From: Octopus sinensis
Taxonomy: Eukaryota
Assembly (NCBI RefSeq): GCF_006345805.1
Contig: NC_043012.1
Span: 4,526,001 to 4,590,000, forward strand
Length of the DNA stretch: 64,000 nt
Direction: 5' to 3'
Below the pieces are notes generated by a model. It was not told the origin of the DNA. It saw nothing but the letters and a program-made list of their open reading frames with translations, and searched no databases. A program made the translations under genes and the position numbers. Positions 7,305 through 59,078 of this stretch are shown piece by piece; position 1 is the first letter of the stretch; each line of letters opens with the position of its first letter.

Positions 7305-7804
7305 TGTGAGTTCGAATCCCGGACTGGGCTGCGCGTTGTGTTCTTGAGCAAGACACTTTATTTCACGTTGCCCCAGTTCACTCAGCTGTAGAAATGAGTT
7401 GCGACGTCACGGGTGCCAAGCTGTATCGGCTGCTGCCTTTCCCTTGGATAACACTGGTGGCGTGGAGAATGGAGACCGGTATGCATGGGCGACTGTTGGT
7501 CTTCCATAAACCACCTTGCTCACACTTGTGACTAGGAGGGTAACTTTCTAGGTGCAATCCCATGGTCAGTATCGTGACCGAAGGGGGTCCCGATATATAT
7601 ATATATATAATATATATATATATATATGTATATGCATGTATATATGTACACATAAAATTGTGTGTTGATTGTTGTGCGTGTGTATGTATGTGTGAGTGTA
7701 TACCTGAATACGTAAGCGTGTGTGTGTGTGTGAATGTGTGTATGTGGTGTTTCCTTTTATACACTCAATAATGCAATAGCGTTTAATATAAAGAAATAAC
7801 TTAC

Positions 7805-8709
7805 TTCTTTACTTGTGACATTCTTTCGGAACTCGGCATCCAGATGTGGTTTGTGATGATTATAATAGAGACAAACAGAAGACCCATCATAAGAATCGGT
7901 GTGAGTATCTCTCCAGGGATTTCCATTTTAAAACAAGCCCATTTTTCAGTGACCAAATTATCTGGAACAATCTTTTTGGTACATTGAGCTATGTTGAGAC
8001 CAACCGACACAGGAGTGACGAGAATTAACGGCAAAGAAAATCCGATTTTCTGCATGTGAAGTTTACAAGCCATACCGGCCAGATAGCAACATATAAGCCC
8101 TGACACGATATGCACATACATTACACCATAACCCTGTAAATGGACAAGCATGTAATCCGTGCTTAAAGAATCTTTCCAGTCTTGTAGAAAACTCCGTATG
8201 TCTTGGTGGGAAAGAGCTAAAGATAAACAAAAGAAAAGCACCATTTTCAGTGGTACCGTGATGATATCAGTTGCTTCCCTTGTCTTCTCGATTCGATTCC
8301 GTAGCCTTTTTAATGGAATCGACAATCTACAGCACTGAATGTCAAAGAAGGCGTAGTTCTCCCACCATGTGAACGACGTCAACACAACAGCAATTGGTAC
8401 AATCCAGTTTTCCGTTTCCGATATCTTCTCGTCTCGATCGGTTGTCCAAGTAAAGAAATCGGTAATGTAGAAAACTGGTATGACACCTATTTGGATGCAG
8501 CAAGCAAGTGAGTAGAAAATCAGGCCCAAGAACCGCGTGGAAAGCTTTTGAAATTTCGCTCCGAAGATCTGCTCTAGAAGTAACATTACTGCAGGGACCT
8601 GTCCAGTTCCAAGAATCAACACAGAAGATCGAAACAATCCTAGGGTTGGAATAATACGGAAGAGGAACAATGCTTTGCCTGTTATTTGTACACATTCAAA
8701 CAGAAACAC
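7805..8709 (-). CDS. CHS: Large multi-TM chitin synthase exon (VFLFECVQ...WWENY...ERMSQVK), phase 0 to 2
   Basis: 905 nt open; tttcag acceptor, GTAAGT donor; WWENY and KLHMQKIGFSLPL-type motifs. Confidence 0.95.
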
Positions 8710-8776
8710 CTGAAACAAACAGATATATGTATATGTATATCCATGTGCATATATATATGTATGTATATATATATAT

Positions 8777-9170
8777 ATTAAATTAGAGATAAAACCACTA
8801 TTAGGCAAATCATACAATGAAAAACTTAAGCCAATACATAAGATTAATTAATTTATATTATTTTAAATATATATCAAAATTATTAAAAAAAGATAATTAG
8901 TATAACACTACGATCGTTTCATGGCTGTCCAATTCGTAAAAATTCGAGTTACAGTCATTCTTCAGTTAAATATTTCAATCACCTGAAGAATGACTGTAAC
9001 TCGAATTTTTACGAATTGGACAGCCATGAAACGATCGTAGTGTTATACTAATTATCTTTTTTAATAATTTTGATATATATTTAAAATAATATAAATTAAT
9101 TAATCTTATGTATTGGCTTAAGTTTTTCATTGTATGATTTGCCTAATAGTGGTTTTATCTCTAATTTAAT
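8777..9170. repeat. Near-perfect palindrome, ~189-bp arms and 17-nt spacer; PLE pLTR-like, sequence continues to ~9255
   Basis: Arms 8777-8965 and 8983-9170 are reverse complements (one homopolymer indel noticed). Confidence 0.93.
8980..9042 (+). ncRNA. Type I hammerhead motif in the arm of a palindrome
   Basis: CAC-CTGAAGA-ATGACTGT...ACAGCCAT-GAAAC-GATC-GTA-GTG; helix I is short. Confidence 0.72.
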
Positions 9171-15672: not shown

Positions 15673-16127
15673 GGTAGTGATCGTTCTGCCATTGTTATTG
15701 TTGACGGTCCTTGTTGTTGCTGTTGTTGTTGTTGGTTGTGATAGTGGAAATGGGGTTAATGGTGTTGGTAATGTGCTTGTTGACGCCCTCGTTGTTGCTG
15801 TTGCTGATGGTGATGACGATGACGATGGTGTTGGTGTTGGTGGTATTAGTAAGGCTGATGGCAATGGTCCTCATTGGTATTGTTATTGTTGGTGGTGTTA
15901 ATGGAGGTATAGTGATGTTGATGGTGTTGGTGGTATCGGGGTGGGCGTGGTTGGCCCATGTAACCATGGGCACATGTCACCACTCTCACCCCCCCCATTC
16001 TTAAAATCTACCAAGGGGCAATGACCCTGTCACCTTTATCTAAGTGCTATCTGATAAATATTTAATAAAATGGCTCTGATACAAGCACAAATACCCCAAT
16101 ATTTTTGAAGGAGAGAGAGGGAGAGAG

Positions 16128-29553: not shown

Positions 29554-30138
29554 TATACATACACACACACACATATATGAAAACAAATGTATATATATAT
29601 ATTCTTGTATATATATATATGTATATTCATGTATTTATACACACACACACTCTCTCTCTCATACACACACACATATTGATAAATGCTGATGATGTTGCTT
29701 TAGATCAATCTTGATTGAGCAAAACCATGATCAAAAGCATTTCAGCTCTGACCAAGCAGGTCTTTCAATGGTTATCCAGGATTACCTTGTCCGCTGCTTT
29801 ATTCCACTCTCAAGATGAGGAGCCGGGGTTGGGGATTGAATTGATAGAAACTTGGCCGCTATAGGATATATTGTACTACGTCGTTTATGACATACATAAA
29901 AGGACGAGTTAATTGCAAATGAAAAAACTCTTTGAATCTTTGGCAAAATGTTTGCTCCACAAGGAATGACCGAGAACTAAACAACAACAATAGCAGCAGC
30001 AAAGAAAACAACAACAACAATAGCAGCAGCAAAGAAAGCAACAACAACAGCAACAAGAATAATCACAATTATTAATTCAAAGATTATCAACATGACCAAT
30101 GCCAAGTAATATAAAAAATGCGGGTTGCTTTACGGTAC

Positions 30139-30288
30139 CTTTTAGAAAATTTCGCAAATGGCAGTCTTATAGGATAGCCATCTTTTCGAATATTTGCAGC
30201 TTCGGTCAACCCACTGGCCCTCAACTGTTGTTGCATGCATCGATGATCGAACTTGTTCGGTTTTAAGTGGGTGTTCGGCTTCAGACAT
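30139..30288 (-). CDS. CHS: Myosin-motor exon (CLKPNTHLKPNKFD...QLRASGLTEAANIRKDGYPIRLPFAKFSK), phase 2 to 2
   Basis: cccctctag acceptor, AG|GTACCG donor; CxKPN and GYPxR motifs. Confidence 0.95.
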
Positions 30289-31069
30289 CTAGAGGGGAAA
30301 ATAATTACAACCTCATTAATTATTTTAACTTTTAGATTCTTTATTGATTTCAGTCTTTATTGTTTATTGATTTAAGTCTAGGATCGATCATAGTGCTTAT
30401 ATTATTGATCCTTGTTTTATCAAATAACTATGTTACATTCAAATATAAGGCAGGCAGTTTTTTTACATCGCTATCTTGACAAAAATATCTGAGAGACTTT
30501 AAAAGAATGGAGTTAGATATTTTCAAGAAGCTCTTTGATCTTTTGTTGTCCAAGAACCGAGATGAACCTAGATTGCGGCAGAAAACTCCCAAAACTCCCT
30601 CCTTTACCAAAAGCCAACCACAAGAGAAAAGCCATTAAAAATGTGATGTTACTGGCGGTGTCCCAATATGTTCACAGCCTTCGAGCTGAAATGCACAAAA
30701 GAATAAAAGAATATATATATATATATATATCATGGCACTCCGTCGGTTGCGACAACGAGGGTTCTGCAGTTGATGCGATCAACGGAACAGCCTCCTCGTG
30801 AAATTAACTTGTACTTCACAGACACGTGTACCCTTAATTTAGTTCTCAGGGAGATTCAGCGTGACACAGAGTATGACAAGGCTGACCCTTTGAAATACAG
30901 GTACAACAGAAACAGGAAGAAAGAGTGAGAAAAAGTTGTGGTGCCGGAGCTTCGTGAAGCTTTAGGTGTTTTCTCTCAATAAACACTCACAATATCCTGT
31001 CTGGGAATCGACCACGAGTTTGCTGCCCTAACCATTGGGCCATTGCGCCTCACACACACATACACACAC

Positions 31070-33064: not shown

Positions 33065-34230
33065 GTGGGTCACCCCATAAATAATGCGGTTTTTTTATAC
33101 TTCTTTTATTTTCCAAAATTAAGATGTAGTTTTTTTAAAATCTAAAATATACTTTCCTTCATTTTCTACAATACTTTTTCGTCTATCTGGTAGATTTGCA
33201 AGGCCCTTTTTCTTAAATTCACTTGTCCGTGACGAAAAATACTCTTCCAGAACTGTTCTGACCTCATCTACAGAATTCATATTTTTTCCGTTCAAATGAT
33301 TTTGAAAACTGCAGAATAAATGATAATCAGATGGGGTAATATCCGGCGAATATGGTGGGTGGGGCAACGTTTCCCATTCAAACTGCTCCAGCTTTTGGGA
33401 TGTCATCCTCGCTGTATATGGCTGAGCCTTATCCTGATGGAAGAACATCTTTCGTCTTGAAACCAAAGATGGTCGTTTTTCTTCTAGCGCTGACTTCAGT
33501 CGCTCAAGCTGTTCGAAGCAGATCTCCTTTGTTATCGTTTGGTTTAGGTTTAAAAGTTCAAAGTGAATTAAACCTTTCATATCCCATTTTTTTTGACATT
33601 TTTGTAGAGAACCTATTTCTCATCGCCAGTCACTATTCAGTTGAAAAAAAGGTTCATTCGTGAGACGTGATAGCAAAGAGGAGCACACAATCACTCTCTG
33701 CACGCGATTAAACTCGGAAAGTTTGTGAGGAACCCATTGTCCCAATTTGCCGACTTTTCCGATGGCATGCAGCTGTTGGTAAATAGTTGAATGACCAAAT
33801 CGAAGCTTCTCTGCTAGTTTCTCAACAGTTGCGATGGGATTTTGGTCCGTCAGGGTTTGCAGGATGTCCACATCGAGCTCTACAAATCTTCCAGGACGAG
33901 GCTTGTCTTCTAGGCTGCAGTTTCCGGCTCGGAATTTCTGGAACCATCGTTGACACGAGCTTAAGCTTATTGTCCGATCTCCATATACTGCATTAATATT
34001 CCTCGCACTTTCTGGTGCGTTGTTGCCTTTATTGAGTTCCTTTGTCACTTCCATTATAGCTTTGAAAAATAACTGTTAAAATCGAACTGCACTCTTCAAA
34101 ACTTACATTAAGAATAAAGACAAAATTATTACCTACTTTTATAGCAAGTTGATGCAGGTAATTTATCTCGTCTCCATTCCGACTTTTAGTTCATGCAATT
34201 GAAAAAAACTACATTATTTATGGGATGACT

Positions 34231-43302: not shown

Positions 43303-43402
43303 NNNNNNNNNNNNNNNNNNNNNNNNNNNNNNNNNNNNNNNNNNNNNNNNNNNNNNNNNNNNNNNNNNNNNNNNNNNNNNNNNNNNNNNNNNNNNNNNNN
43401 NN
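43303..43402. other. Assembly gap (100 N)
   Basis: Run of N between a TA/TATG microsatellite and purine-rich sequence; true size unknown. Confidence 1.
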
Positions 43403-43866: not shown

Positions 43867-44560
43867 CTGTAGGGACAGATAAAAACAATAAGATCATCAT
43901 TGTCGTCATTCATCATCATCATCATCATCATCATCAACTCCATCGTTGTCGTGGTTGCTGTAACTGTTATTGTCGTAACTGTCACCATCAAAATCCTTAT
44001 CACTACGACTACTACAATCCTCCCCCCCCTCCTCCCCTCCCCTCCTCCTCCTCCTCCTCCTCCTCCCCCTCCCGCCCTCCCCTCCTCCCCATCCCCTCCT
44101 CCTATTCACCCTCCTCCTCCTCCTCCCTCTTCTCGTCGACGTCGTCGTTGGTGGTTGTCTTCGCCTTCGTTCATAAACATATACGTATATACATATATAC
44201 GACGAGCTTCTTTCAGTTTCCGCCTACTAAATCCACTCCAAGGCTTTGGTCGGCCCGAAGCTATTTGTAGAAGACACTTGCTCAAGGTGCCTCGCAGTGG
44301 GTCTGAACCCGGAACCATGTGTTTGGGAAGCAAGCTTCTTGTCGCACAGCCACGCCTGCGCCTATATAAATGACTTTATACACTCCTTATCGTTTTCTCT
44401 CGCATCGTACTATATATTGCATACCTAGTAGAATGAAACGTTAAGGATATTTTTATGAATATCGCCGGGTTACTCGAACCCATATATTCTGACTTAAATT
44501 TACGTATGTATACATAAATTTATATAAATTTAGAAATATATAAATATATATGTGTGTATA

Positions 44561-46153: not shown

Positions 46154-46784
46154 CTCTATCTATATCTATATATACGTACATTACATACATAATACATACA
46201 TACATATATAATATATCTATATATATATATATATTTATTTTTTTTATTTACCTAGTTTCAGCTCACGAGCTGTGGCCATGCTGGGGCACCGCCATTTATA
46301 TATATATATATATATATATGTAGGTCCCGGGTTGATCCGGGGTTAACCACAGTAAGTAAGGTACTCAATACATAGCAGAGTAAAATTAATTTATATATAG
46401 AAGGAGCTTCTACAGGACTAGTACTGTTTCATTCAAGAGAAATCTTCAGGAAGCTATTTAACAAGAATTGTATTAGCATTTATACATTTAGGCAGTTTTA
46501 AAGGAGTGGTGGTGGGGGACTTTTTTGGGGGTAGGCATAGCGCAAAATATCATACTTGGGGAGTGGTCCAGGAGTCAGTGGTAAGTTAATGAAAGAATGA
46601 TAAATAAAAAAATAAAAAATAAAAAATAAAAAATAAAAAATAAAAAAAAAAAAAAAATAAAATGTGTGCACATACATACATAAAACACATTATAACATCA
46701 CACACACATACGTACACATGTGTGCCTATACATACCTACACATACACACATACACATACATATACAATACATATATACACACAC

Positions 46785-46822
<38 letters not shown>

Positions 46823-47153
46823 ATCCAATACAGGCCCATTCCCTAATTTTATTTTATTATCTTCATTTATTACTTTTGTTATCTTTGATCGCTAGAGCTA
46901 AGGATCCTGGCGATGGCAGCATGTCCAAATTGTCTGTCTACTAGAAGGCAAGTACTCGTTCCCGCACGCACACTCATTAGCACGTACATACACCCATTCG
47001 TACACTCATACACATTACACGTACGCACGCGTTATATTCATACATACAAACAATCTACATACGTTCACGTATATACACATACGTACTCGTACCTACAGAT
47101 TCATGTTACACTTAGGAGGCTAGTCTATATATATACACCATAAATATACATTA

Positions 47154-47185
<32 letters not shown>

Positions 47186-47564
47186 CACATATACACATAC
47201 ACACACACACACACATATATATCCCCTACATACAGATACATACCTAATTATATATATATATATATACCACACATACATGTACACAATATATATTATATAT
47301 ACATACATATATATATTATATATACATATATATATATATATATATACATACATACATACACACACACCCATATATATACAACACATACATACACCATATA
47401 TATAAACACAAACTATAACAACACATATATATATATATACATATATACACACATACATACACCAACCTTACAGATATACACACAAACACATACATACGTA
47501 AACATACATACATACATCCATACATCCATACTTACATGCACTTATACGCATACACACACCCCCA

Positions 47565-47603
<39 letters not shown>

Positions 47604-48148
47604 TATATATATATACACACTCACACATACATATACAAATATACGCCCACACATACATACAAAATACACGTATACGCATACACGCACATACACATATACA
47701 TGCGTACCCATACACGTGCACACGCACATGCATCCATATGTATAACACACACACACATATATACACGTGTGCAAGCATACAACATACTCATACACGCACA
47801 CATACTTACATAACATATATGCACACACTTACACACATATATACATACACATATACATGCATACATACAATATATGCATACATACACATACACGCCACAT
47901 ACACATATACACATGCGTACCCATAAACACGTGCACGCACGCACGCGCATCCATAATATACACACGCACGCATATATATCACGTGTGCAAGCATACATAC
48001 ATACTCATACCCGCGCACATATTATATACATATATGCACACACTTCCACACAATATACATACACATATACATGCATACATACATATATGCATACCACACC
48101 ACGCGCACTCATAATTACATATATATATACACACATACACATATATAC

Positions 48149-48196
<48 letters not shown>

Positions 48197-48603
48197 ATAT
48201 AACACATACACATACACACATATATACATACATATACACATACATATATATACACATATACACTACACATACATGCACACTACACACACATACACATACA
48301 CCTACATACATCTATATATATATATATATATACACATATGTACACACACATACACATATACACATACATATATACACACATACATACATATACATACACA
48401 CACACATACATATATACACGGATACACATACCCATACATATATATATATATATATATCTATATACACACACACACATATACACATGCATATACTTATATC
48501 TCTACATACTCACATATAAACATATATATATATACACACACACATATATATACATGTACACACACATACACAAATACATACATATATACACATACACACA
48601 TAC

Positions 48604-48634
<31 letters not shown>

Positions 48635-48635
48635 C

Positions 48636-48668
<33 letters not shown>

Positions 48669-48700
48669 CACACCTATACCCCCACATATATACATATATA

Positions 48701-48743
<43 letters not shown>

Positions 48744-48903
48744 TACATATACACATATACATGTATACATACGCAATAATGATACACATATATACACATA
48801 CACACACACAGACAGATGCATATACATACATATATAATATAAAGATTACATATCTATTAAATACATACATAATACACAATACAACACATATATATACATA
48901 CAT

Positions 48904-48934
<31 letters not shown>

Positions 48935-49526
48935 CATATATATACATACATATACATAATATACATATATACATACACATGCACATACATATACAAATAT
49001 ACAACACATGCATACACACATGTATGTGCGCGCGTTGTGTGTGTATGGATGTGTATGATATTTTGTATTGTATGTGCATGTGTATGTATATATGTATATA
49101 TATGTATAGTATGTATATTATATCTCCCTTTTTAGTAGAGAGAAATAGCTATAACCCTTTGACTGCTATTTCTAAATTCGGTATGTGGTAAGGCAATTCG
49201 TTGCTGAACCCTTATTGCTTAGTATTACTTAAATTTTCCTCAAATGAGGCTTTTACATGCCGAAGACTACTTGGTGTAATTGATAATTATTCCAAATAAT
49301 TAATTTCACCCTTCATTATTACGGATAACCATATTTTATCTCAGTAGATGACTACAGCATCTTGTTTTGGCTACAGCGGGTGGGAAGGGGCTGTTGACAC
49401 AATCGTTTCATTCACAAATGAATTCGGTGATACTAGTTGAGGATTCTAGCTCGCTCTGATACTGAGTTGAGTTGGTACCTCCTAGTATCTCAAAATTCAA
49501 TATATAATCATTTATGATTATAGTAT

Positions 49527-49633
49527 TCCACGCTGAAGAGAAAAGAAGTTTCGGTAAGATGGAATTATTTAATATTTAATATTTTAATTCTTATGCTTTC
49601 CTAAAACTTGATTTCGAAACGTACGTCCGTGGA
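49527..49633 (+). ncRNA. Type I hammerhead ribozyme, array unit 1
   Basis: TCCACG-CTGAAGA-[76-nt helix II GAAA...TTTC]-GAAAC-GTAC-GTC-CGTGGA. Confidence 0.9.
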
Positions 49634-50129
49634 TAACTTATAAAAATGTTTGATAGATTGCGGTTAATTCATTCTTCTTACCTGTTTGTGTCAGCCTTCC
49701 AATTGCTGTTTTTACTGAGATCTCCCTTTTTAGTAGAAGAATAGAAATAGCTATAACCTTTGACTGCTATTTCTAAATTCGGTATGTGGTAAGGCAATTC
49801 GTTGCTGAACCCTTATTGCTTAGTATTACTTAAATTTTCCTCAAATGAGGCTTTTACATGCCGAAGACTACTTGGTGTAATTGATAATTATTCCAAATTA
49901 ATTAATTTCACCCTTCATTATTACGGATAACCATATTTTATCTCAGTAGATGACTACAGCATCTTGTTTTGGCTACACGCGGGTGGGAAGGGGTGTGACA
50001 CAATCGTTTCATTCACAAATTTGAATTCGGTGATACTAGTTGAGGATTCTAGCTCGCTCTGATACTGAGTTGAGTTGGTACCTCCTAGTATCTCAAAATT
50101 CAATATATAATCATTTATGATTATAGTAT

Positions 50130-50236
50130 TCCACGCTGAAGAGAAAAGAAGTTTCGGTAAGATGGAATTATTTAATATTTAATATTTTAATTCTTATGCT
50201 TTCCTAAAACTTGATTTCGAAACGTACGTCCGTGGA
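50130..50236 (+). ncRNA. Type I hammerhead ribozyme, array unit 2
   Basis: Same intact core and helices as unit 1. Confidence 0.9.
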
Positions 50237-50726
50237 TAACTTTAAAAATGTTTGATAGATTGCGGTTAATCATTCTCTCTTACCTGTTGTGTCAGCCTTC
50301 CAATTGCTGTTTTTACTGAGATCTCCTTTTTAGTAGAAGAAATAGCTATAACCCTTTGACTGCTATTTCTAAATTCGGTATGTGGTAAGGCAATTCGTTG
50401 CTGAACCCTTATTGCTTAGTATTACTTAATTTTTCCTCAAATGAGGCTTTTACATGCGAGACTACTTGGTGTAATTGATAATTATTCCAAATTAATAATT
50501 TCACCCTTCATTATTATACGGATAACCATATTTTATCTCAGTAGATGACTACAGCATCTTGTTTTGGCTACACGCGGGTGGGAAGGGGCTGTTGACACAA
50601 TCGTTTCATTCACAAATTGAATTCGGTGATACTAGTTGAGGATTCTAGCTCGCCTCTGATACTGAGTTGAGTTGGTACCTCCTAGTATCTCAAAATTCAA
50701 TATATAATCATTTATGATTATAGTAT

Positions 50727-50832
50727 TCCACGCTGAAGAGAAAAGAAGTTTCGGTAAGATGGAATTATTTAATATTAATATTTTAATTCTTATGCTTTCC
50801 TAAAACTTGATTTCGAAACGTACGTCCGTGGA
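50727..50832 (+). ncRNA. Type I hammerhead ribozyme, array unit 3
   Basis: Same intact core and helices. Confidence 0.9.
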
Positions 50833-51322
50833 TAACTTTAAAAATGTTTGATAGATTGCGGTTAATTCATTCTCTCTTACCTGTTTGTGTCAGCCTTCCA
50901 ATTGCTGTTTTTACTGAGATCTCCCTTTTTAGTAGAAGAAATAGCTATAACCCTTTGACTGCTATTTCTAAATTCGGTATGTGTAAGGCAATTCGTTGCT
51001 GAACCCTTATTGCTTAGTATTACTTAAATTTTCCTCAAATGAGGCTTTTACATGCCGAAGACTACTTGGTGTAATTTAATTATTCCAAATTAATTAATTT
51101 ACACCTTCATTATTACGGATAACCATATTTTATCTCAGTAGATGACTACAGCATCTTGTTTTGGCTACACGCGGGTGGGAAGGGGCTGTTGACACAATCG
51201 TTTCATTCACAAATTGAATTCGGTGATACTAGTTGAGGATTCTAGCTCGCTCTGATACTGAGTTGAGTTGGTACCTCCTAGTATCTCAAAATTCAATATA
51301 TAATCATTTATGATTATAGTAT

Positions 51323-51429
51323 TCCACGCTGAAGAGAAAAGAAGTTTCGGTAAGATGGAATTATTTAATATTTAATATTTTAATTCTTATGCTTTCCTAA
51401 AACTTGATTTCGAAACGTACGTCCGTGGA
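51323..51429 (+). ncRNA. Type I hammerhead ribozyme, array unit 4
   Basis: Same intact core and helices. Confidence 0.9.
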
Positions 51430-51924
51430 ACTTTAAAAATGTTTGATAGATTGCGGTTAATTCATTCTCTCTTACCTGTTGTGTCAGCCTTCCAATTGCT
51501 GTTTTTTTACTGAGATCTCCCTTTTTAGTAGAAGAAATAGCTATAACCCTTTGACTGCTATTTCTAAATTCGGTATGTGGTAAGGCAATTCGTTGCTGAA
51601 CCCTTATTGCTTAGTATTACTTAAATTTTCCTCAAATGAGGCTTTTACATGCCGAAGACTACTTGGTGTAATTGATAATTATTCCAAATTAATTAATTTC
51701 ACCCTTCATTATTACGGATAACCATATTTTATCTCAGTAGATGACTACACAGCATCTTGTTTTGGCTACACGCGGGTGGGAAGGGGCTGTTGACACAATC
51801 GTTTCATTCACAAATTTGAATTCGGTGATACTAGTTGAGGATTCTAGCTCGCTCTGATACTGAGTTGAGTTGGTACCTCCTAGTATCTCAAAATTCAATA
51901 TATAATCATTTATGATTATAGTAT

Positions 51925-52028
51925 TCCACGCTGAAGAGAAAAAGTTTCGGTAAGATGGAATTATTTAATATTTAATATTTTAATTCTTATGCTTTCCTAA
52001 ACTTGATTTCGAAACGTACGTCCGTGGA
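51925..52028 (+). ncRNA. Type I hammerhead ribozyme, array unit 5
   Basis: Same intact core and helices. Confidence 0.9.
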
Positions 52029-52523
52029 TAACTTTAAAATGTTTGATAGATTGCGGTTAATTCATTCTCTCTTACCTGTTTGTGTCAGCCTTCCAATTGC
52101 TGTTTTTACTGAGATCTCCCTTTTTTAGTAGAAGAATAGCTATAACCCTTTGACTGCTATTTCTAAATTCGGTATGTGGTAAGGCAATTCGTTGCTGAAC
52201 CCTTATTGCTTAGTATTACTTAAATTTTCCTCAAATGAGGCTTTTACATGCCGAAGACTACTTGGTGTAATTGATAATTATTCCAAATTAATTAATTTCA
52301 CCCTTCATTATACGGATAACCATATTTTATCTCAGTAGATGACTACAGCATCTTGTTTTGGCTACACGCGGGTGGGAAGGGGCTGTTGACACAATCGTTT
52401 CCATTCACAAATTTGAATTCGGTGATACTAGTTGAGGATTCTAGCTCGCTCTGATACTGAGTTGAGTTGGTACCTCATCCTATTATCTCAAAATTCAATA
52501 TATAATCATTTATGATTATAGTT

Positions 52524-52626
52524 TCCACGCTGAGAAAAAGAAGTTTTCGTAAGATGGAATTATTTAATATTTAATATTTTAATTCTTATGCTTCCTAAAC
52601 TTGATTTCGAAACGTACGTCCGTGGA
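52524..52626 (+). ncRNA. Hammerhead motif, array unit 6 (CTGA-GA, one core base missing)
   Basis: Helices I and III are intact. The 1-nt core deletion is either a mutation or a sequencing error. Confidence 0.7.
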
Positions 52627-53118
52627 TACTTTAAATGTTTGATAGATTGCGGTTAATTCATTCTCTCTTACCTGTTTGTGTCAGCCTTCCAATTGCTGTT
52701 TTTACTGAGATCTCCCTTTTTAGTAGAAGAAATAGCTATAACCCTTTGACTGCTATTTCTAAATTCGGTATGTGGTAAGGCATTCGTTGCTGAACCCTTA
52801 TTGCTTAGTATTACTTAAATTTTCCTCAAATGAGGCTTTTACATGCCGAAGACTACTTGGTGTAATTGATAATTATTCCAAATTAATTAATTTCACCCTT
52901 CATTATTACGGATAACCATATTTTACTCAGTAGATGACTACTCAGCATCTTGTTTTGGCTACACGCGGGTGGGAGGGGCTGTTGACACAATCGTTTCATC
53001 ATTCACAATTTGAATTCGGTGATACTAGTTGAGGATTCTAGCTCGCTCTGATACTGAAGTTGAGTTGGTTACCTCCTAGTATCTCAAAATTCAATATATA
53101 TCATTTATATTATAGTAT

Positions 53119-53224
53119 TCCACGCTGAAGAGAAAAGAATTTCGGGTAAGATGGAATTATTTAATATTTAATATTTTAATTCTTATGCTTTCCTAAAACT
53201 TGATTTCGAAACGTACGTCCGTGG
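53119..53224 (+). ncRNA. Type I hammerhead ribozyme, array unit 7
   Basis: Same intact core and helices. Confidence 0.88.
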
Positions 53225-53630
53225 ATAACTTTAAAAATGTTTGATAGATGCGGTTAATTCATTCTCTCTTACCTTTTTGTGTCACCTTCCAATTGCTGTT
53301 TTTACTGAGATCTCCCTTTTTAGTAGAAGAAATAGCTATAACCCTTTGACTGCTATTTCTAATTCGGTATGTGGTAAGGCAATTCGTTGCTGAACCCTTA
53401 TTGCTTTGTATATAATATATTATATATATAATGTATGTATATGTATGTATATATATGTTGTGTAATATGTGTATTATGGTATGTATTTATATAGATATGT
53501 AATCTTTATATATATCTGTATTATATGCATCTGTCTTGGTTGTTATGTGTATATATGTTGTATCATTATTGGCGTATGTCGTACATGTAATTGTGTATAG
53601 GTATGTTGTGTTGTGTGTGGTATATGTGGG

Positions 53631-53661
<31 letters not shown>

Positions 53662-54739
53662 GTGGGGGTATAGTTGGTGTCTATATCTATATATATGTTA
53701 TATATGTATATGTATAGTATATATAGATATATATATGTATGTGTGTATGGTCTATTGTATGTAATTTTGTGTATGTGTGTGTAACAGTATATATATGTGT
53801 GTGTGTATATATATATATGTTTATATATGTGAGTATGTAGAGATATAAGTATATGCATGGTGTATATGTGTGTGTGTGATATAGATTCTAATATATATAT
53901 ATATATGTATGGGTATGTGTATCCGTGTTATATGTATGTGTGTGTGTATGTTATTATGTATGTGTGTATATATGTATGTGTATATGTGTATGTGTGTGTA
54001 CATATGTGTATATATATATATATAGATGTATGTAGGTGTATTTGTATGTGTGTGTATGTGTGCATGTATGTGTAGGTGTATATGTGTATATATATGTATG
54101 TGTATATGTATGTATATAATGTGTTATGTGTATGTGGTATATATATAATATATATATATATATAATATATATATATAATATAGTATATGTATATATGTGT
54201 ATGTGTGTATATAATAGGTATATATCGAGTGCGCTTGTGGTTGTATGCATATATGTATGTATGCATGTATATGTTATGTATATATGTGTGGAAGTGTGTG
54301 CATATTGTATATGTAATATGTGCGCGTGTATGAGTATGTATGTATCTTGCACACGTGTATAATATATCGTGCGTGTGTATATATATATGGATTCCGTGCG
54401 TGCGTGCACGTGTATGGGTACGCATGTGTATATGTTATGTGCGTGTATGTTGTATGTATGCATATTGTATGTATGCATGTATATGTGTATGTATATATGT
54501 GTGTAAGTGTGTTGCTATAATGATATGTAAGTATGTGTGCGTGTATGAGTATGTATGTATGCTTGCACACGTGTATATATGTGTGTGTGTGTATAATATG
54601 GATGCATGTGCGTGTGGGCACGTGTATGGGTACGCATGTATATTGTATGTGCTTGTATGCGTATACGTGTATGTATGTATGTATGTGTGTGGGCGTATAT
54701 TTGTATATGTATGTGTGAGTGTGTATATATATATATATA

Positions 54740-54779
<40 letters not shown>

Positions 54780-55989
54780 TGGGGGTGTGTGGTATGCGTA
54801 TAAGTGCATGTAAGTATGGATTATGGATTATGTATGTATGTTTACGTATGTATGTGTTTGTGGGTATATGTATGTAGGTGTGTGTATGTATGTGTGTAAT
54901 TATGTATATATATATATCTGTGTGTATATTGTTTGTGTATGTATATATATGTGATGTATGTGTGTGGTCTATATATGGGTGTGTGTGTATGTATGTATGT
55001 ATAATATATATTATATATGTATATATATATATATAATAATGTATTATATATATATATATATGTGGTACATGTATGTGTGGGTATATATATATATATTATA
55101 GGTATGTATCTGTTATGTAGGGGTATATAATGTGTTGTGTGTGTGTGTATGTGTATATGTGTATATATATATATGTATTATTATATATAATATATATTGT
55201 ATATTTATGGGTGTATATATATAGACTAGCCTCCTAAGTGTAGACATGAATCTGTAGGTACGAGTACGTATGTGTATATACGTTAACGTATGTAGATGTT
55301 TTGTATGTATGAATATAACGCGTGCGTACGTGTATGTGTATGAGTGTACGAATGGTGTATGTACGTGCTAATGAGTGTGCGTGGGGGAACGAGTACTTGC
55401 CTTCTAGTAGACAACAATTTGGACATGCTGCCATCGCCAGAGGATCCTTAGCTCTACGATCAAAGATAACAAAAGTAATAAATGAAGATAATAAATTAAA
55501 ATTAGGGAATGGCCTGTATTGGATTGTGTATATATATATATTATATATATATATATCTATATAGTATATTATATATATATATGTGTGTGTATATATGTAT
55601 GTATATATGTATGTGGTATGTGTGTATGTGTAGGTAATGTATAGGCCACATGTGTACGTATGTGTGTGTGTATGTATATGTGTTTATTATGTATGTGCCA
55701 CATTTTATTTTTTTTATTTTTTTATTTTTTATTTTTTTATTTTTTTATTTTTTTATTTATCTATTCTTTCATCTAACTTACCACTGACTCCTGGACCACT
55801 CCCCCAGTATGATATTTTGCGCTATGCCTACCCCCAAAAAAGTCCCCCACCACCACTCCTTTAAACCTGCCTAAATGTATAAATGCTAATACAATCTTGT
55901 TAAATAGCTTCCTGAAGATTTCTCTTGAATGAAACGTACTAGTCCTGTAGAAGCTCCTTCTATATAATAAATAATATATATATATATAT

Positions 55990-56769: not shown

Positions 56770-57172
56770 TTTTACTCTTTCACTTGTTTCAGTCATGTGA
56801 CTGTGGCCATGCTGGAGCACCGCCTTTAGTCGATCAAATCGACCCCAGGACTTATTCTTTTTAAGCCTAGTACATATTTTATCGGTCTCTTTTTTGCCGA
56901 ACCGCTAAGTTACGGGGACGTAAACACACCAGCATCGGTTGTCAAGCGATGTTGCGGGGACAAACACAGACACACAAACACGCATATATATATATATACA
57001 CATATATACGACGGGCTTCTTTCAGTTTCCATCTATCAAATCCACTCACAAGTCTTTGGTCGGCCCGAGGCTATAGTAGAAGACACTTGCCCAAGGTGCC
57101 ACGAAGTGTCACTGAACCCGGAACCATGTGGTTCCTGAGCAAGCTACTTACCTCACAGCCACACCTACGTCT
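56770..57172 (-). mobile_element. SINE family C with internal microsatellite. Related copies at ~4805-5245, 44188-44365 (-) and 13903-14530, 15203-15360, 27383-27535, 36440-36605, 39965-40050, 62493-62910 (+)
   Basis: Shared gtggctgtgtggtaag...ggttcagtccca...ctcgggccgaccaaagcc...gacggaaactgaaagaagc block. Confidence 0.85.
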
Positions 57173-57351
57173 ATATGTAAATATATATATAACGTACTAT
57201 GATTAGTTCAACATGTGTAAGAGCGAAGTGTGGATCAGCGAGTGCACGCATGCGTGTGTTTCTGTATGTGTGTAGATATGTGTCTGTGAGTGAGATTTTG
57301 TTTGTGAAGGGCGGGGGGATATTTGTGAATATTTCAAAATGAAAGGTTTAC

Positions 57352-57580
57352 CTTTAAAATCAAATCTATGACGTCTTTGTTATCGTGGAACTGTATATCT
57401 TTCCAGTGAATTCCTTCCTTTTCGTACTCTTCTTGTTCCCGCCTGATGACATTCGTCAGAAAGATTTGGTGAAGCACTTCGTTGGCTGTGTTAATCAGCA
57501 ACTGTTCAAACCCGTTCACAGAAAGCTTTTCAAAGCCAGATATGTCCAAGAGACTAATTGAAGGAGACTTACGACTAGTT
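57352..57580 (-). CDS. CHS: Myosin-motor exon with switch II and relay helix (LLDISGFEKLSVNGFEQLLINTANE...), phase 2 to 0
   Basis: atacag acceptor, GTAAAC donor. The ORF track lists this ORF as + but the peptide is encoded on the minus strand. Confidence 0.95.
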
Positions 57581-58652
57581 CTGTATAGAGACGGCGACAT
57601 AAGATAAATAGAAGCAGAAGCGAATTATTGTAAAGAAGCAAGTACAGAATTATAGTAAAGAAGCAAGTACAGAATGAGTGAAAAAGCGAAGAACTATTAT
57701 TTCTTTGTTTAAAGGAATTATACTTTTAGGTTATAATAAAATGTCTGCCTTTTCACATTCCAACTGGTTTCTCATCAGAAGCCAATGTAACAGCTCTGGT
57801 CTTTGCAAGTCACGAAAATATTTAATGAATTAAGAGACTGGGATACCATCTATATTGAAGTAGAACCCTCAGTGAAGGCTATTGTTCCTTTCTAAAAACC
57901 TAAACTGTAAATGCGGTGTTCAGGTCAATAGAGGTATCAGGGAACTCAACTAGACTCCAGCGGTTCGTGTTTTGTTACCGGCAGTTGAAGTAGTTGCAAT
58001 AGATTGAATCAACTGATCTACGTTACAGCCATGTATTTTTAGGACACTTTAAGCTTGAGTGATAAAGTTGCGGCATTTGAACTCAGAACGTAAAAGAGAC
58101 ACATTTTGAGAAGGGGTTCGCAGGATATTTAATAGATCCCAATACTTGATTGTTTTAGATTACAAGTAATTTAAAAGAAATCTGAAAAAAGTGACGTAGT
58201 TTTTCGAAGTTTTAAATCAGAAAAAACAAAACAAAACAATGGTAGACTTCACTTAAGGAAAATGCCATACATTTTAAGGAATGGTGGGACATTTAAGAGA
58301 GTTCCAGAACTTAACTGGTAATATATTTTGTTGCCCCGTAGAAAATATAAGTCTAAGTCACTCTCAAGAGAATATGAACTCAGAATAAATACAGTACTAC
58401 ATTTTGTTCAGAGTTCTTCCAGTTTTGCCATCAACGATTTTCGGATGATGGGTAAAAGATCAATTTAAGCGATCCCAGTTAGTTGAGTTCGTTATCGGAT
58501 TTGAAGGCAATTGAACTTAGATTCAGAGGAAGGTGACTAAATACCACAAGATCTTACGTTTCATTCGTTCGTCCAACCACCATTATTGTCGAGAACAAAT
58601 TAAAACAAAGACATCCTAACTAGATGGAAATAGACATTCAACATTACTTAAC

Positions 58653-58803
58653 TGTATACAGGCCTCAGGGGATACACTCTCCTTCAATTTGCTGTTGATT
58701 TGATCAATGACACAGGTGAAGAGGAGGGAGTAGAGTTCTTTAGCTAAAGCATCTCGGCCTTCGTTTGCTTCTACTATTCTTTTGCGTTTGGTAATCTTTT
58801 GAC
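58653..58803 (-). CDS. CHS: Myosin-motor exon (QKITKRK...GRDALAKELYSLLFTCVIDQINSKL...), phase 1 to 2
   Basis: RDALAK-LY motif; tag acceptor. Donor GTTAAG was chosen for phase compatibility, so the exact 3' end is less certain. Confidence 0.85.
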
Positions 58804-59078
58804 CTAGTATGTGTAACGAAAGAGAACATCAATGATAAGCATAGTTAAGACTTTGGCTCAGATCTATCGACTGAAAGTGAAGTGTGACAACAACACCATT
58901 ACCTCCCCACCATTAAAAGTAACCAATCAAAAAACATAGCAAAAAAACAAAACGCGGAAGTGATTAACAAAACAGTCAAGAGCTATCGATAGATTATCCA
59001 CTACAAGGTTGCTAGGCTTGCAAGAAATACTAGATACATATTCCTTAAAACCAGGATACTATCACCGTAAAGCAAACA

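What the first reader, a model, noticed from the sequence alone, without database searches (positions are those of the whole stretch)
49123..53406. Retrozyme-like tandem array: ~7 copies of a ~598-nt unit, each with a type I hammerhead ribozyme
Seen: each unit reads TCCACG (helix I) - CTGAAGA - 76-nt helix II - GAAAC - GTAC - GTC - CGTGGA (helix I'). This gives a perfect 6-bp helix I, canonical CUGANGA and GAAA cores, a GUC cleavage triplet and a palindromic helix III (ACGUACGU). The core is intact in 6 of 7 full units. Predicted cuts fall after 49627, 50230, 50826, 51423, 52022, 52620 and 53218, about 596-603 nt apart. Established: tandem type I HHR repeats are the architecture of animal non-LTR retrozymes and of the newt, schistosome and cricket HHR satellites. 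Multimeric transcripts of those elements self-cleave to monomers that can circularise, and palindromic helix III supports dimeric cleavage. Inference: this is a cephalopod retrozyme family encoding a ~600-nt circular RNA. From memory that is longer than most reported animal monomers (verify). It is probably mobilised by Penelope-like elements.
Basis: partly seen in the sequence, partly recalled or inferred. Interest (0 to 1): 0.93.

Follow-up and report, generated by a model that had tools for sequence, protein, structure and literature searches.

The report
Tandem hammerhead-ribozyme retrozyme array
Seven head-to-tail copies of a 600-base non-coding unit, each with a complete self-cutting hammerhead RNA motif, sit as one discrete insertion in an intron of a mollusc-type chitin synthase gene; this is a clean new example of the known animal 'retrozyme' repeats, not a new kind of element.

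Summary
Window 49124-53406 (+) is 7.16 tandem units of 596-603 bp. Each unit carries TCCACG-CUGAAGA-[76-nt hairpin]-GAAA-C-GUAC-GUC|CGUGGA. The core is intact in 6 of 7 units. My type I hammerhead descriptor hit only these sites, and nothing in 4.8 Mb of shuffled sequence. Helix I (6 bp), the base of helix II (4 bp, G10.1-C11.1) and helix III (2 bp plus palindromic GUAC) match the published canonical metazoan type I design. The exception is that loop 2 is replaced by an internal loop and a ~60-nt extension, and Rfam models do not detect the motif. The 600-nt unit is non-coding, 34% GC, and much more structured on the ribozyme strand. New here: the array interrupts one arm of a 2.6-kb palindrome whose other arm is uninterrupted. 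It is therefore a 4283-bp insertion into AT-rich microsatellite with at most 1 nt of target duplication. It lies antisense in an intron of a myosin-chitin synthase gene. Best reading: a non-LTR retrozyme, a known class. The 600-nt size falls inside the published range. The cephalopod origin, PLE mobilisation, cleavage and circular RNA remain untested. No relatives were reachable, so there is no covariation evidence.

The parts
49124..53406 (+). Tandem array of 7.16 units built on a 600-nt consensus (34% GC, non-coding). It begins at consensus position 95 and ends at position 190, numbering from the cleavage site.
49527..49633 (+). Hammerhead copy 1, type I, core intact. Predicted cut after 49627.
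50130..50236 (+). Hammerhead copy 2, core intact. Predicted cut after 50230.
50727..50832 (+). Hammerhead copy 3, core intact, helix II 75 nt. Predicted cut after 50826.
51323..51429 (+). Hammerhead copy 4, core intact. Predicted cut after 51423.
51925..52028 (+). Hammerhead copy 5, core intact, helix II 73 nt (small deletions on both strands of the stem). Predicted cut after 52022.
52524..52626 (+). Hammerhead copy 6, as assembled. A 2-nt deletion turns CUGAAGA into CUGAGAA and loses G8, so it is predicted inactive. This may be assembly noise. The corresponding site is after 52620.
53119..53225 (+). Hammerhead copy 7, core intact. Predicted cut after 53219.
46389..49020 (.). Left arm of a 2.6-kb palindrome. 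Its reverse complement runs uninterrupted across the point (48936/48937) that corresponds to the array's insertion site, so it serves as a paralogous or allelic empty site.
49038..49123 (.). Proximal 86 bp of the right palindrome arm, lying between the palindrome centre (GCGCGCG at 49028) and the array.
53407..55972 (.). Remainder of the right palindrome arm, resuming directly after the array. Once the array is removed, the arms align end to end at 90.9% identity.

Best explanation
This is a genomic copy of a metazoan non-LTR retrozyme. The 600-nt non-coding unit is repeated head to tail, and its + strand RNA carries one type I hammerhead per unit. The likely mechanism has five steps, all inferred. 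(1) The + strand is transcribed through several units, probably by Pol II, because each unit has two T5 runs and no AAUAAA or AUUAAA on that strand. (2) Each hammerhead cuts after GUC. It may act alone (2-bp helix III plus GUAC tetraloop, the 'invertebrate-like' design) or as a double hammerhead, in which two copies pair their ACGUACGU segments into an 8-bp helix III. (3) The 600-nt monomer has a 5'-OH and a 2',3'-cyclic phosphate. Helix I and its extension hold these ends side by side, and a host RNA ligase of the RtcB type joins them into a highly base-paired circle. (4) A reverse transcriptase supplied in trans, most plausibly from a Penelope-like element, copies the circle more than once around, giving a multimeric cDNA. 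(5) That cDNA is integrated into AT-rich DNA. Four things are shown here: the motif, its geometry, the strand-specific structure, and the fact that the array is a discrete 4283-bp insertion into (TA)n/(TATG)n microsatellite with at most 1 nt of target duplication. The array lies antisense in an intron, so the host pre-mRNA carries only the ribozyme-free strand.
For: Complete core and helices are present in 6 of 7 units, only on the + strand, with 0 descriptor hits in 4.8 Mb of shuffled background. The geometry equals the published canonical metazoan type I design of helix I 6 bp, helix II 4 bp with G10.1-C11.1, and helix III 1-2 bp with a 2-4-nt palindromic loop (PMC4209133). In the circular ensemble, helix I pairs have probability 0.89-1.0 and the four base pairs at the foot of helix II 0.94-0.98. 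Helix III has 0.04, so it is weak in a monomer. Cofolding two ribozyme domains gives the intermolecular 8-bp ACGUACGU helix with ddG -12.4 kcal/mol. Unit 50827-51423 folds at -173.5 kcal/mol on the + strand (z -7.9) against -136 on the - strand (z -4.5). The circular consensus gives + -161.7 (z -5.5) and - -124.6 (z -0.7). GC is 34%. The longest stop-free run on the circle is 58 aa and has no Pfam hit. The reverse complement of the left palindrome arm aligns to 49038-49123 and then directly to 53407 onward, sharing 1 nt at the junction. With the array removed, the arms are colinear over their full length. The AT-rich target fits the PLE endonuclease preference and the internal initiation of reverse transcription reported in PMC11167929. 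Neither array end falls at the cleavage site; they are at consensus positions 95 and 190, the latter in a predicted single-stranded stretch. The + strand has no poly(A) signal. The antisense intronic position follows from Myosin_head exons at 57337-57624(-) and 30090-30356(-).
Against: Rfam found no hammerhead, either at gathering score or at E<=10. I attribute this to the 76-nt helix II, but I could not test that. No related copy exists in the window or in the viral, prokaryotic or metagenome collections; the three 19-mer hits are chance matches in GC-rich contigs. There is therefore no covariation support, and the seven copies count as one observation. Loop 2 is not a hairpin loop but a 2x2 internal loop followed by a long extension, so the canonical loop1-loop2 contact is unproven. 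No transcript, cleavage or circle data are available. No PLE reading frame was found among the ORFs tested. No clear target-site duplication is present. Differences between copies are mostly singleton 1-2-nt indels, so both the copy number and the 'broken' unit may reflect assembly noise.
Confidence: 0.75

Rival explanations
1. An ordinary satellite that grew at the DNA level. One or two units carrying a hammerhead, possibly a relic, landed here, and unequal crossing-over or replication slippage expanded them to seven. In that case the array length says nothing about rolling-circle reverse transcription, and the RNA may no longer be active.
For: The units are near-identical, which is equally expected from recent DNA-level homogenisation. 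The array sits in highly unstable, microsatellite-rich palindromic DNA. One unit has a broken core.
Against: The core is intact in 6 of 7 units, and structure is strongly in excess on the ribozyme strand. The array has sharp ends against an uninterrupted paralogous site, so at least the founding event was an insertion. This rival concerns only how the array reached seven copies and is compatible with a retrozyme origin.
Confidence: 0.1
2. A tandem array of pseudo-LTR or 3'-terminal fragments of a Penelope-like element, that is, 5'-truncated PLE copies laid down in tandem by the PLE's own integration mechanism without any circular RNA stage.
For: PLEs insert as partial tandems, prefer AT-rich or microsatellite targets and carry hammerheads in their pLTRs (PMC8557442, PMC11167929, PMC4209133). 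The 2026 preprint 10.64898/2026.07.22.740005 derives animal retrozymes from pLTRs.
Against: The hammerhead is of the canonical kind (helix I 6 bp, helix II 4-bp base, real helix III), not the minimal PLE kind (no helix III, helix I 4-5 bp, helix II 7-8 bp, an extra unpaired base after A9) described in PMC4209133. No RT or EN remnant was found in the unit or in the tested ORFs. No 30-40-bp 'tail' is seen at either junction.
Confidence: 0.08
3. An assembly artefact. The array, its copy number or the surrounding palindrome was created or distorted by a noisy long-read assembly, for example a haplotype mis-join or a foldback chimera.
For: Differences between units are 54 singleton indels, 7 shared indels, 31 singleton substitutions and 0 shared substitutions. 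The palindrome arms differ by 164 gap positions against 85 mismatches. The palindrome is spacer-less. A 100-N gap lies at 43303-43402.
Against: A simple foldback of one molecule would put the array in both arms, yet only one arm has it. Host-gene exons keep their order and strand across the region. The unit itself cannot be produced by an assembler.
Confidence: 0.04
4. An endogenised copy of an exogenous viroid-like or deltavirus-like circular RNA replicon.
For: It would be a small structured circle with a hammerhead, laid down as a multimeric DNA copy.
Against: No ribozyme of any Rfam class, and no hammerhead descriptor hit, lies on the minus strand. There is no ORF. Composition (34% GC) and the type I canonical metazoan architecture match genomic retrozymes (PMC7229834).
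Confidence: 0.02
5. A chance resemblance to a hammerhead inside an unrelated repeat.
For: Rfam gives no hit, and there is only one independent sequence.
Against: The descriptor gave 0 hits in 4.8 Mb of shuffles and none elsewhere in the window. All invariant core positions, G10.1-C11.1 and the A15.1-U16.1 closure are present together with the canonical 6/4/2-bp geometry. Structure is in excess on the same strand.
Confidence: 0.01

Closest known systems
Metazoan non-LTR retrozymes (coral Acropora millepora 220-240 bp, mussel Mytilus galloprovincialis 350-390 bp, axolotl 330/350 bp; Cervera and de la Pena 2020, PMC7229834)
   Same: Head-to-tail repeats with one type I hammerhead per unit. Low GC, non-coding, with no LTR. 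The monomer is predicted to be highly self-paired. Helix III is 2 bp plus a tetraloop, as in the invertebrate motifs. The mussel motifs likewise lack the archetypal loop1-loop2 nucleotides.
   Different: The unit is 600 nt against the 170-400 nt reported there. Helix II is 76 nt, with an internal loop where loop 2 normally sits. Expression and circularity are unknown here. This copy also comes with an empty-site comparison showing insertion with at most 1 nt of duplication.
pDo500 satellite of Dolichopoda cave crickets (463-505 bp units with a hammerhead; PMC2837043)
   Same: A long (~500 bp) tandem unit with a single hammerhead. Both single and double-hammerhead cleavage modes have been proposed for it.
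   Different: pDo500 is a high-copy satellite conserved across species with documented compensatory changes. Here only one 7-unit array is visible, and no comparative data exist.
Newt/salamander satellite 2 and axolotl HHR_Amex1/2 retrozymes
   Same: A type I hammerhead with a very short helix III and a palindromic loop, allowing dimeric cleavage. The units are arranged in tandem.
   Different: The amphibian motifs keep the loop1-loop2 contacts and a short helix II. Amex1 has a 1-bp helix III and needs dimers, whereas this motif has 2 bp plus a tetraloop, like Amex2 and the invertebrate motifs.
Minimal hammerheads in pseudo-LTRs of Penelope-like elements (Cervera and de la Pena 2014, PMC4209133)
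   Same: A type I motif with palindromic 15.2-16.2 positions. It is associated with tandem insertions and AT-rich or microsatellite targets. PLEs are the likely source of the reverse transcriptase.
   Different: The PLE motifs lack helix III, have a shorter helix I (4-5 bp) and a longer continuous helix II (7-8 bp), carry an extra base after A9, and flank an RT-EN ORF. None of these applies here.
Plant LTR retrozymes (PMC4918200)
   Same: Circular RNAs of about 600-1000 nt bounded by hammerheads. They are non-autonomous.
   Different: The plant elements have type III hammerheads inside LTRs, a PBS and a PPT, 4-bp TSDs and GC above 55%. None of these is seen here.

Membership tests
Hammerhead ribozyme, type I (canonical metazoan form) | Conserved core: C3 U4 G5 A6 N7 G8 A9, G12 A13 A14, the A15.1-U16.1 pair, H17 not G | tested here: met
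   CUGAAGA ... GAAA-C-GUAC-G-U-C| is present in 6 of 7 units. One unit has a 2-nt deletion in the first box.
Hammerhead ribozyme, type I (canonical metazoan form) | Topology: helix I open, helices II and III closed. Helix I ~6 bp, helix II ~4 bp with G10.1-C11.1, helix III 1-2 bp with a 2-4-nt palindromic loop (PMC4209133). | tested here: met
   Helix I is UCCACG/CGUGGA, 6 bp. Helix II starts GAAA/UUUC, 4 bp with G-C at 10.1-11.1. Helix III is AC/GU plus GUAC.
Hammerhead ribozyme, type I (canonical metazoan form) | Loop 1 - loop 2 tertiary contact | tested here: inconclusive
   Both helices have 2x2 internal loops at the canonical distances (U.U/A.A after 6 bp of helix I; A.A/G.G after 4 bp of helix II). 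However, loop 2 is not a hairpin loop, and the helix continues for about 60 nt. No 3D or comparative test was possible.
Hammerhead ribozyme, type I (canonical metazoan form) | Match to the Rfam covariance models for hammerheads | tested here: not met
   No hammerhead family was reported at gathering score over the window, nor at E<=10 over 48900-53700. The long insertion in helix II is the likely cause, which is an inference.
Hammerhead ribozyme, type I (canonical metazoan form) | Site-specific self-cleavage | not testable with these tools
   This needs in vitro transcription of monomer and dimer constructs.
Metazoan non-LTR retrozyme | [quoted passage not shown] | tested here: met
   There are 7.16 units of 596-603 bp, with one motif each.
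Metazoan non-LTR retrozyme | Non-coding, with no LTR, and low GC (<45-50%) | tested here: met
   The longest stop-free run on the circle is 58 aa and has no Pfam hit. The whole unit repeats, so there is no LTR architecture. GC is 34%. PBS and PPT were not searched for systematically.
Metazoan non-LTR retrozyme | Monomer RNA predicted to be highly self-paired | tested here: met
   The + strand gives z -7.9 (linear unit) and -5.5 (circular consensus), with 65% of bases paired. The - strand is clearly weaker.
Metazoan non-LTR retrozyme | Mobile: copies are insertions, with TSDs variable or absent | tested here: met
   The array interrupts one palindrome arm at a point where the other arm is continuous. 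The junction overlap is at most 1 nt. Only this one locus is available.
Metazoan non-LTR retrozyme | Expressed as linear and circular RNA of unit length | not testable with these tools
   No transcript data could be reached.
Metazoan non-LTR retrozyme | Co-occurrence with, or sequence relation to the pLTRs of, Penelope-like elements in the same genome | not testable with these tools
   Only 64 kb is available. The tested ORFs show no RT or GIY-YIG, and no TE library is on hand. The giant squid genome paper lists Penelope elements and 235 Rfam 'hammerhead 1' loci (PMC6962438), so the combination does exist in cephalopods.
PLE pseudo-LTR minimal hammerhead | No helix III, helix I 4-5 bp, helix II 7-8 bp, an extra base between A9 and 10.1, and a flanking RT-EN ORF | tested here: not met
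   Helix III is present, helix I is 6 bp, there is no extra base after A9, and no adjacent RT-EN ORF was found.
Viroid-like / deltavirus-like replicon | Ribozymes in both polarities (or a delta-antigen ORF) | tested here: not met
   The minus strand has no descriptor hit and no Rfam ribozyme at E<=10. There is no ORF.

The most novel reading that the evidence does not exclude
The filled and empty pair captures a single integration event in which a multimeric (7.16-turn) cDNA, made by rolling-circle reverse transcription of a 600-nt hammerhead circle, was captured about 100 bp from the centre of a spacer-less 2.6-kb palindrome without target duplication. That would mean repair of a palindrome-induced break rather than classical endonuclease-staggered integration. 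In addition, the hammerhead would tolerate a ~60-nt extension in place of loop 2, using two internal loops for the tertiary contact. Together these would be a new structural variant of the canonical metazoan motif and would bear directly on how animal retrozymes integrate.
Probability: 0.15. Interest if true: 0.6.

Novelty: new member of a known kind. Interest (0 to 1): 0.35.

Why it matters
Animal retrozymes are a recently defined class whose integration mechanism and helper element are still inferred rather than demonstrated. This locus offers three things. It is a clean, probably young copy. It has an unusually long helix II, which tests how much the canonical type I hammerhead can tolerate at loop 2. 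And it has an internal empty-site control showing that a seven-unit block sits in AT-rich microsatellite with essentially no target duplication. If the host is a cephalopod, the locus would extend experimentally tractable retrozymes to a group where, in the papers I could search, only Rfam 'hammerhead 1' counts have been reported. None of this changes the current picture of the class.

Tried and rejected
Rfam at gathering score over the whole window and at E<=10 over 48900-53700 reported no ribozyme. The only hits were sub-threshold miRNA-like matches, caused by the microsatellite palindrome centre at 48966-49117.

TRF did not report the array because its longest period is 500.

A blastn search of the 600-nt consensus against the rest of the window found no other copy; the best E-value was 0.03 over 21 nt.

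The public scans also came up empty. The two-part hammerhead pattern had 0 matches in metagenomes. The 21-mer had 0 matches in viral and prokaryotic genome contigs. The 19-mer in metagenomes gave 3 hits, all in 55-62% GC contigs without a CUGANGA box upstream, so they are chance matches. As a result, no covariation analysis or covariance model was worthwhile.

Identifying the species through proteins failed. The chitin-synthase exon gave a single 26%-identity hit, and the myosin exon gave none.

ARAGORN found no tRNA or tRNA-like module in the window.

Pfam scans of 30 stop-free stretches found only host-gene and mariner domains. None matched RT or GIY-YIG, and nothing inside the array matched. 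This is a limited test, not a full six-frame scan.

I considered and rejected a simple foldback sequencing artefact as the origin of the array's context, because only one arm carries the array.

Full report
OBSERVATION

The feature exists at the stated coordinates. Direct-repeat families with a period of 595-603 bp cover 49.1-53.4 kb. TRF missed the array only because its maximum period is 500. The string GAAACGTACGTC|CGTGGA occurs seven times, always on the + strand. This places the predicted cleavage after 49627, 50230, 50826, 51423, 52022, 52620 and 53219. Cutting at these sites gives six full units of 596-603 bp, a 504-bp 5' partial and a 187-bp 3' partial, which is 7.16 units. The 5' half, TCCACG-CTGAAGA, is intact in six units. 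The unit starting at 52524 reads CTGAGAA, a 2-nt deletion that removes G8.

IS IT MORE THAN CHANCE?

I wrote a type I descriptor requiring helix I of at least 4 bp, CTGANGA, a helix II of at least 3 bp and up to 100 nt, GAAA, a helix III of at least 2 bp closed by A-U, and H17 not G. It hit exactly the six intact copies and nothing else in the window on either strand. It gave zero hits in 40 dinucleotide-preserving shuffles of the remaining 59.6 kb on both strands, about 4.8 Mb in all. Because the copies are near-identical, this counts as one independent observation, but a very improbable one.

Rfam did not report a hammerhead at gathering score, nor at E<=10 on the array. I attribute this to the 76-nt helix II. 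That is an inference, because the tools cannot scan an edited sequence.

ANATOMY OF THE RIBOZYME

- Helix I is UCCACG/CGUGGA (6 bp). It is followed by a 2x2 internal loop (U.U, A.A) and further pairing.
- Helix II opens with G10.1-C11.1 and three A-U pairs. Then come a 2x2 internal loop (A.A, G.G), a 6-bp stem and an AT-rich distal hairpin, 76 nt in all.
- Helix III is A15.1-U16.1 plus C-G, capped by GUAC, so the segment reads ACGUACGU. The cleavage triplet is GUC.

Cervera and de la Pena describe the canonical metazoan type I motif as helix I 6 bp, helix II 4 bp, and helix III 1-2 bp with a 2-4-nt palindromic loop (PMC4209133). This motif matches that description, except that a hairpin loop 2 is replaced by an internal loop and an extension.

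In the partition function of the circular monomer, helix I pairs have probability 0.89-1.0 and the base of helix II 0.94-0.98. Helix III has about 0.04. Cofolding two ribozyme domains yields the intermolecular 8-bp ACGUACGU helix, with a gain of 12.4 kcal/mol over two monomers. Double-hammerhead cleavage is therefore plausible. However, a 2-bp helix III with a tetraloop is also the design that PMC7229834 calls invertebrate-like and found to cleave as a single motif, so monomeric cleavage is not excluded.

THE REST OF THE UNIT

- The majority consensus is 600 nt with 34% GC.
- The longest stop-free run on the circle is 58 aa, and the longest stretches have no Pfam match.
- No tRNA-like module is present.
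- Genomic unit 50827-51423 folds at -173.5 kcal/mol on the + strand (z -7.9) and at -136 kcal/mol on the - strand (z -4.5).
- As a circle, the consensus gives -161.7 (z -5.5) on the + strand against -124.6 (z -0.7) on the - strand. About 65% of bases are paired, and helices I and II of the hammerhead are retained in the global fold.
- The excess structure is therefore on the ribozyme strand, as expected for an RNA-level element.
- The + strand has no AATAAA or ATTAAA and has two T5 runs. This argues (by inference) for read-through Pol II transcripts rather than Pol III.

THE ARRAY IS AN INSERTION

The array lies inside a 2.6-kb palindrome. Positions 46389-48936 match the reverse complement of 53407-55972 at 90.9% identity over 2636 columns.

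A fine alignment shows how the arms relate around the array. The reverse complement of 49020-48936 matches 49038-49123. The reverse complement of 48936-48761 then matches 53407-53586. A single T is shared at the junction. With the array removed, the arms are colinear over their whole length, 2632 against 2652 nt, with 85 mismatches and 164 gap positions. The centre is a spacer-less GCGCGCG at 49028.

The left arm is therefore an uninterrupted copy of the target. It shows that the 4283 bp from CTCCC... to ...ATTGCTT are a discrete insertion into (TA)n/(TATG)n microsatellite, about 100 bp from the palindrome centre, with at most 1 nt of duplication.

Neither end of the array is at the ribozyme cut. 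The ends are at consensus positions 95 and 190, the latter in a predicted single-stranded stretch. This is what copying a circular or multimeric template from an internal start would give. It is not what insertion of a self-cleaved linear monomer would give.

An AT-rich target and internal initiation of reverse transcription are properties reported for a purified PLE protein (PMC11167929), and microsatellite bias is reported for PLEs generally (PMC8557442). The position next to a palindrome centre and the lack of duplication would also fit capture of a cDNA at a break. I cannot separate these two possibilities.

CONTEXT

Three Myosin_head exons lie on the minus strand:
- 58619-58828, profile positions 316-359
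- 57337-57624, profile positions 357-435
- 30090-30356, profile positions 582-637

A ChitinSynthase_IV_N exon at 7804-8847 is also on the minus strand. From general knowledge, a myosin-chitin synthase fusion gene is a lophotrochozoan, notably molluscan, feature. The array therefore lies in an intron, antisense to the gene. The host pre-mRNA carries only the ribozyme-free strand, which is a sensible orientation for tolerance (inference).

The taxon could not be pinned down. Two protein searches returned one 26%-identity hit and nothing. It is compatible with the AT-rich, microsatellite-laden sequence and with reports of Penelope elements and 235 'hammerhead 1' loci in the giant squid genome (PMC6962438).

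DATA QUALITY

Differences among the units are 54 singleton indels, 7 shared indels, 31 singleton substitutions and no shared substitution. The palindrome arms also differ mainly by indels. This pattern looks like residual long-read error in repeats that short reads could not polish, and the window contains a 100-N scaffold gap at 43303-43402. In reality the copies may be identical, the broken sixth core may be an artefact, and the copy number may be approximate. The palindrome itself could be a local mis-assembly or a haplotype join. Even then, the arm without the array is an independent record of the empty target, because a foldback of one molecule would carry the array in both arms.

MECHANISM AND COMPARISON

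The best-supported reading is a non-LTR retrozyme of the kind defined in coral, mussel and axolotl (PMC7229834, PMC7761336). In that model, multimeric + strand transcripts self-cleave at each hammerhead. The monomers are ligated by a host ligase into structured circles. A trans-acting reverse transcriptase, proposed to be that of PLEs (PMC7761336; 10.64898/2026.07.22.740005), copies the circle and integrates multimers. Every structural criterion I could test is met; expression and the helper element are untested.

The motif is not the minimal PLE pLTR type, since helix III is present, helix I is 6 bp and there is no extra base after A9 (PMC4209133). It is not a plant LTR retrozyme. It is not a two-polarity viroid-like replicon either, because the minus strand has no ribozyme.

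The size is not exceptional. It exceeds the 170-400 nt range of PMC7229834. However, pDo500 units are 463-505 bp (PMC2837043), and the 2026 preprint reports consensus lengths of 51-972 bp, with three quarters of families reaching at most seven repeats.

VERDICT

I classify it as a new member of a known kind. The points of modest specialist interest are the long helix II and the built-in empty-site comparison. Interest 0.35.

Noticed in passing
window 46389-49020 and 49038-49123 + 53407-55972; centre GCGCGCG at 49028: A spacer-less palindrome with 2.6-kb arms (90.9% identity, differing mostly by indels), made largely of imperfect (ATAC)n/(TATG)n microsatellite. GC skew flips from -0.39 to +0.46 across it. 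It could be a real inverted duplication or a local assembly/haplotype artefact.
   Followed up: partly
window 46389-46663 (+) and 55703-55972 (-): The outer end of each palindrome arm is a ~210-bp unique segment (GAAGGAGCTTCTACAGG...) followed by an (AAAAAAT)n tail, and each is bordered outside by (TA)n. It looks like a short A-tailed retroposon whose tail seeded the microsatellite. No other copy is present in the window.
   Followed up: partly
window 7804-8847(-), 30090-30356(-), 57337-57624(-), 58619-58828(-): Exons of a minus-strand gene combining a myosin motor head (Pfam Myosin_head, E 3e-26, 9e-13 and 5e-6) with a chitin synthase N-terminal transporter domain (PF23000, E 1e-9). This is a lophotrochozoan/mollusc-type myosin-chitin synthase with introns of tens of kb. 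No close homologue was found in the protein database searched.
   Followed up: partly
window 33122-34075 (-): A mariner/Mos1-like transposase remnant split over two frames (HTH_48 E 4e-15; Transposase_1 E 4e-10).
   Followed up: partly
window 43303-43402: A run of 100 N (scaffold gap). Together with the indel-dominated differences between repeat copies, it suggests a scaffolded long-read assembly with unpolished repeats.
   Followed up: no
window 48966-49117: Sub-threshold Rfam matches to miRNA families (mir-3149, mir-297, mir-568 and others; 24-48 bits against gathering scores of 75-100). They are hairpins formed by the microsatellite palindrome centre, not miRNA genes.
   Followed up: yes
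window 49453, 50056, 51249, 51851, 52448, 53045 (+), consensus about position 425-434: Most units contain GCTCTGATAC. From memory, this equals the 3' acceptor strand of plant initiator tRNA-Met, that is, the reverse complement of the PBS used by plant LTR retrozymes. It is on the wrong strand for priming on the + RNA and belongs to the wrong kingdom, so it is probably chance. One unrelated copy lies at 16073.
   Followed up: no
window 19.5-21.3 kb (+) and 35.9-36.3 kb (+): Stop-free stretches with the look of non-LTR (LINE/RTE-like) retrotransposon C-terminal regions, for example ...KYRWAGHIARLKDNKETMRATEWTPR.... They gave no Pfam hit at E<=0.01. Several short SINE-like repeats recur through the window, for example 44172-44367 and 56983-57176 at 83% identity.
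   Followed up: partly
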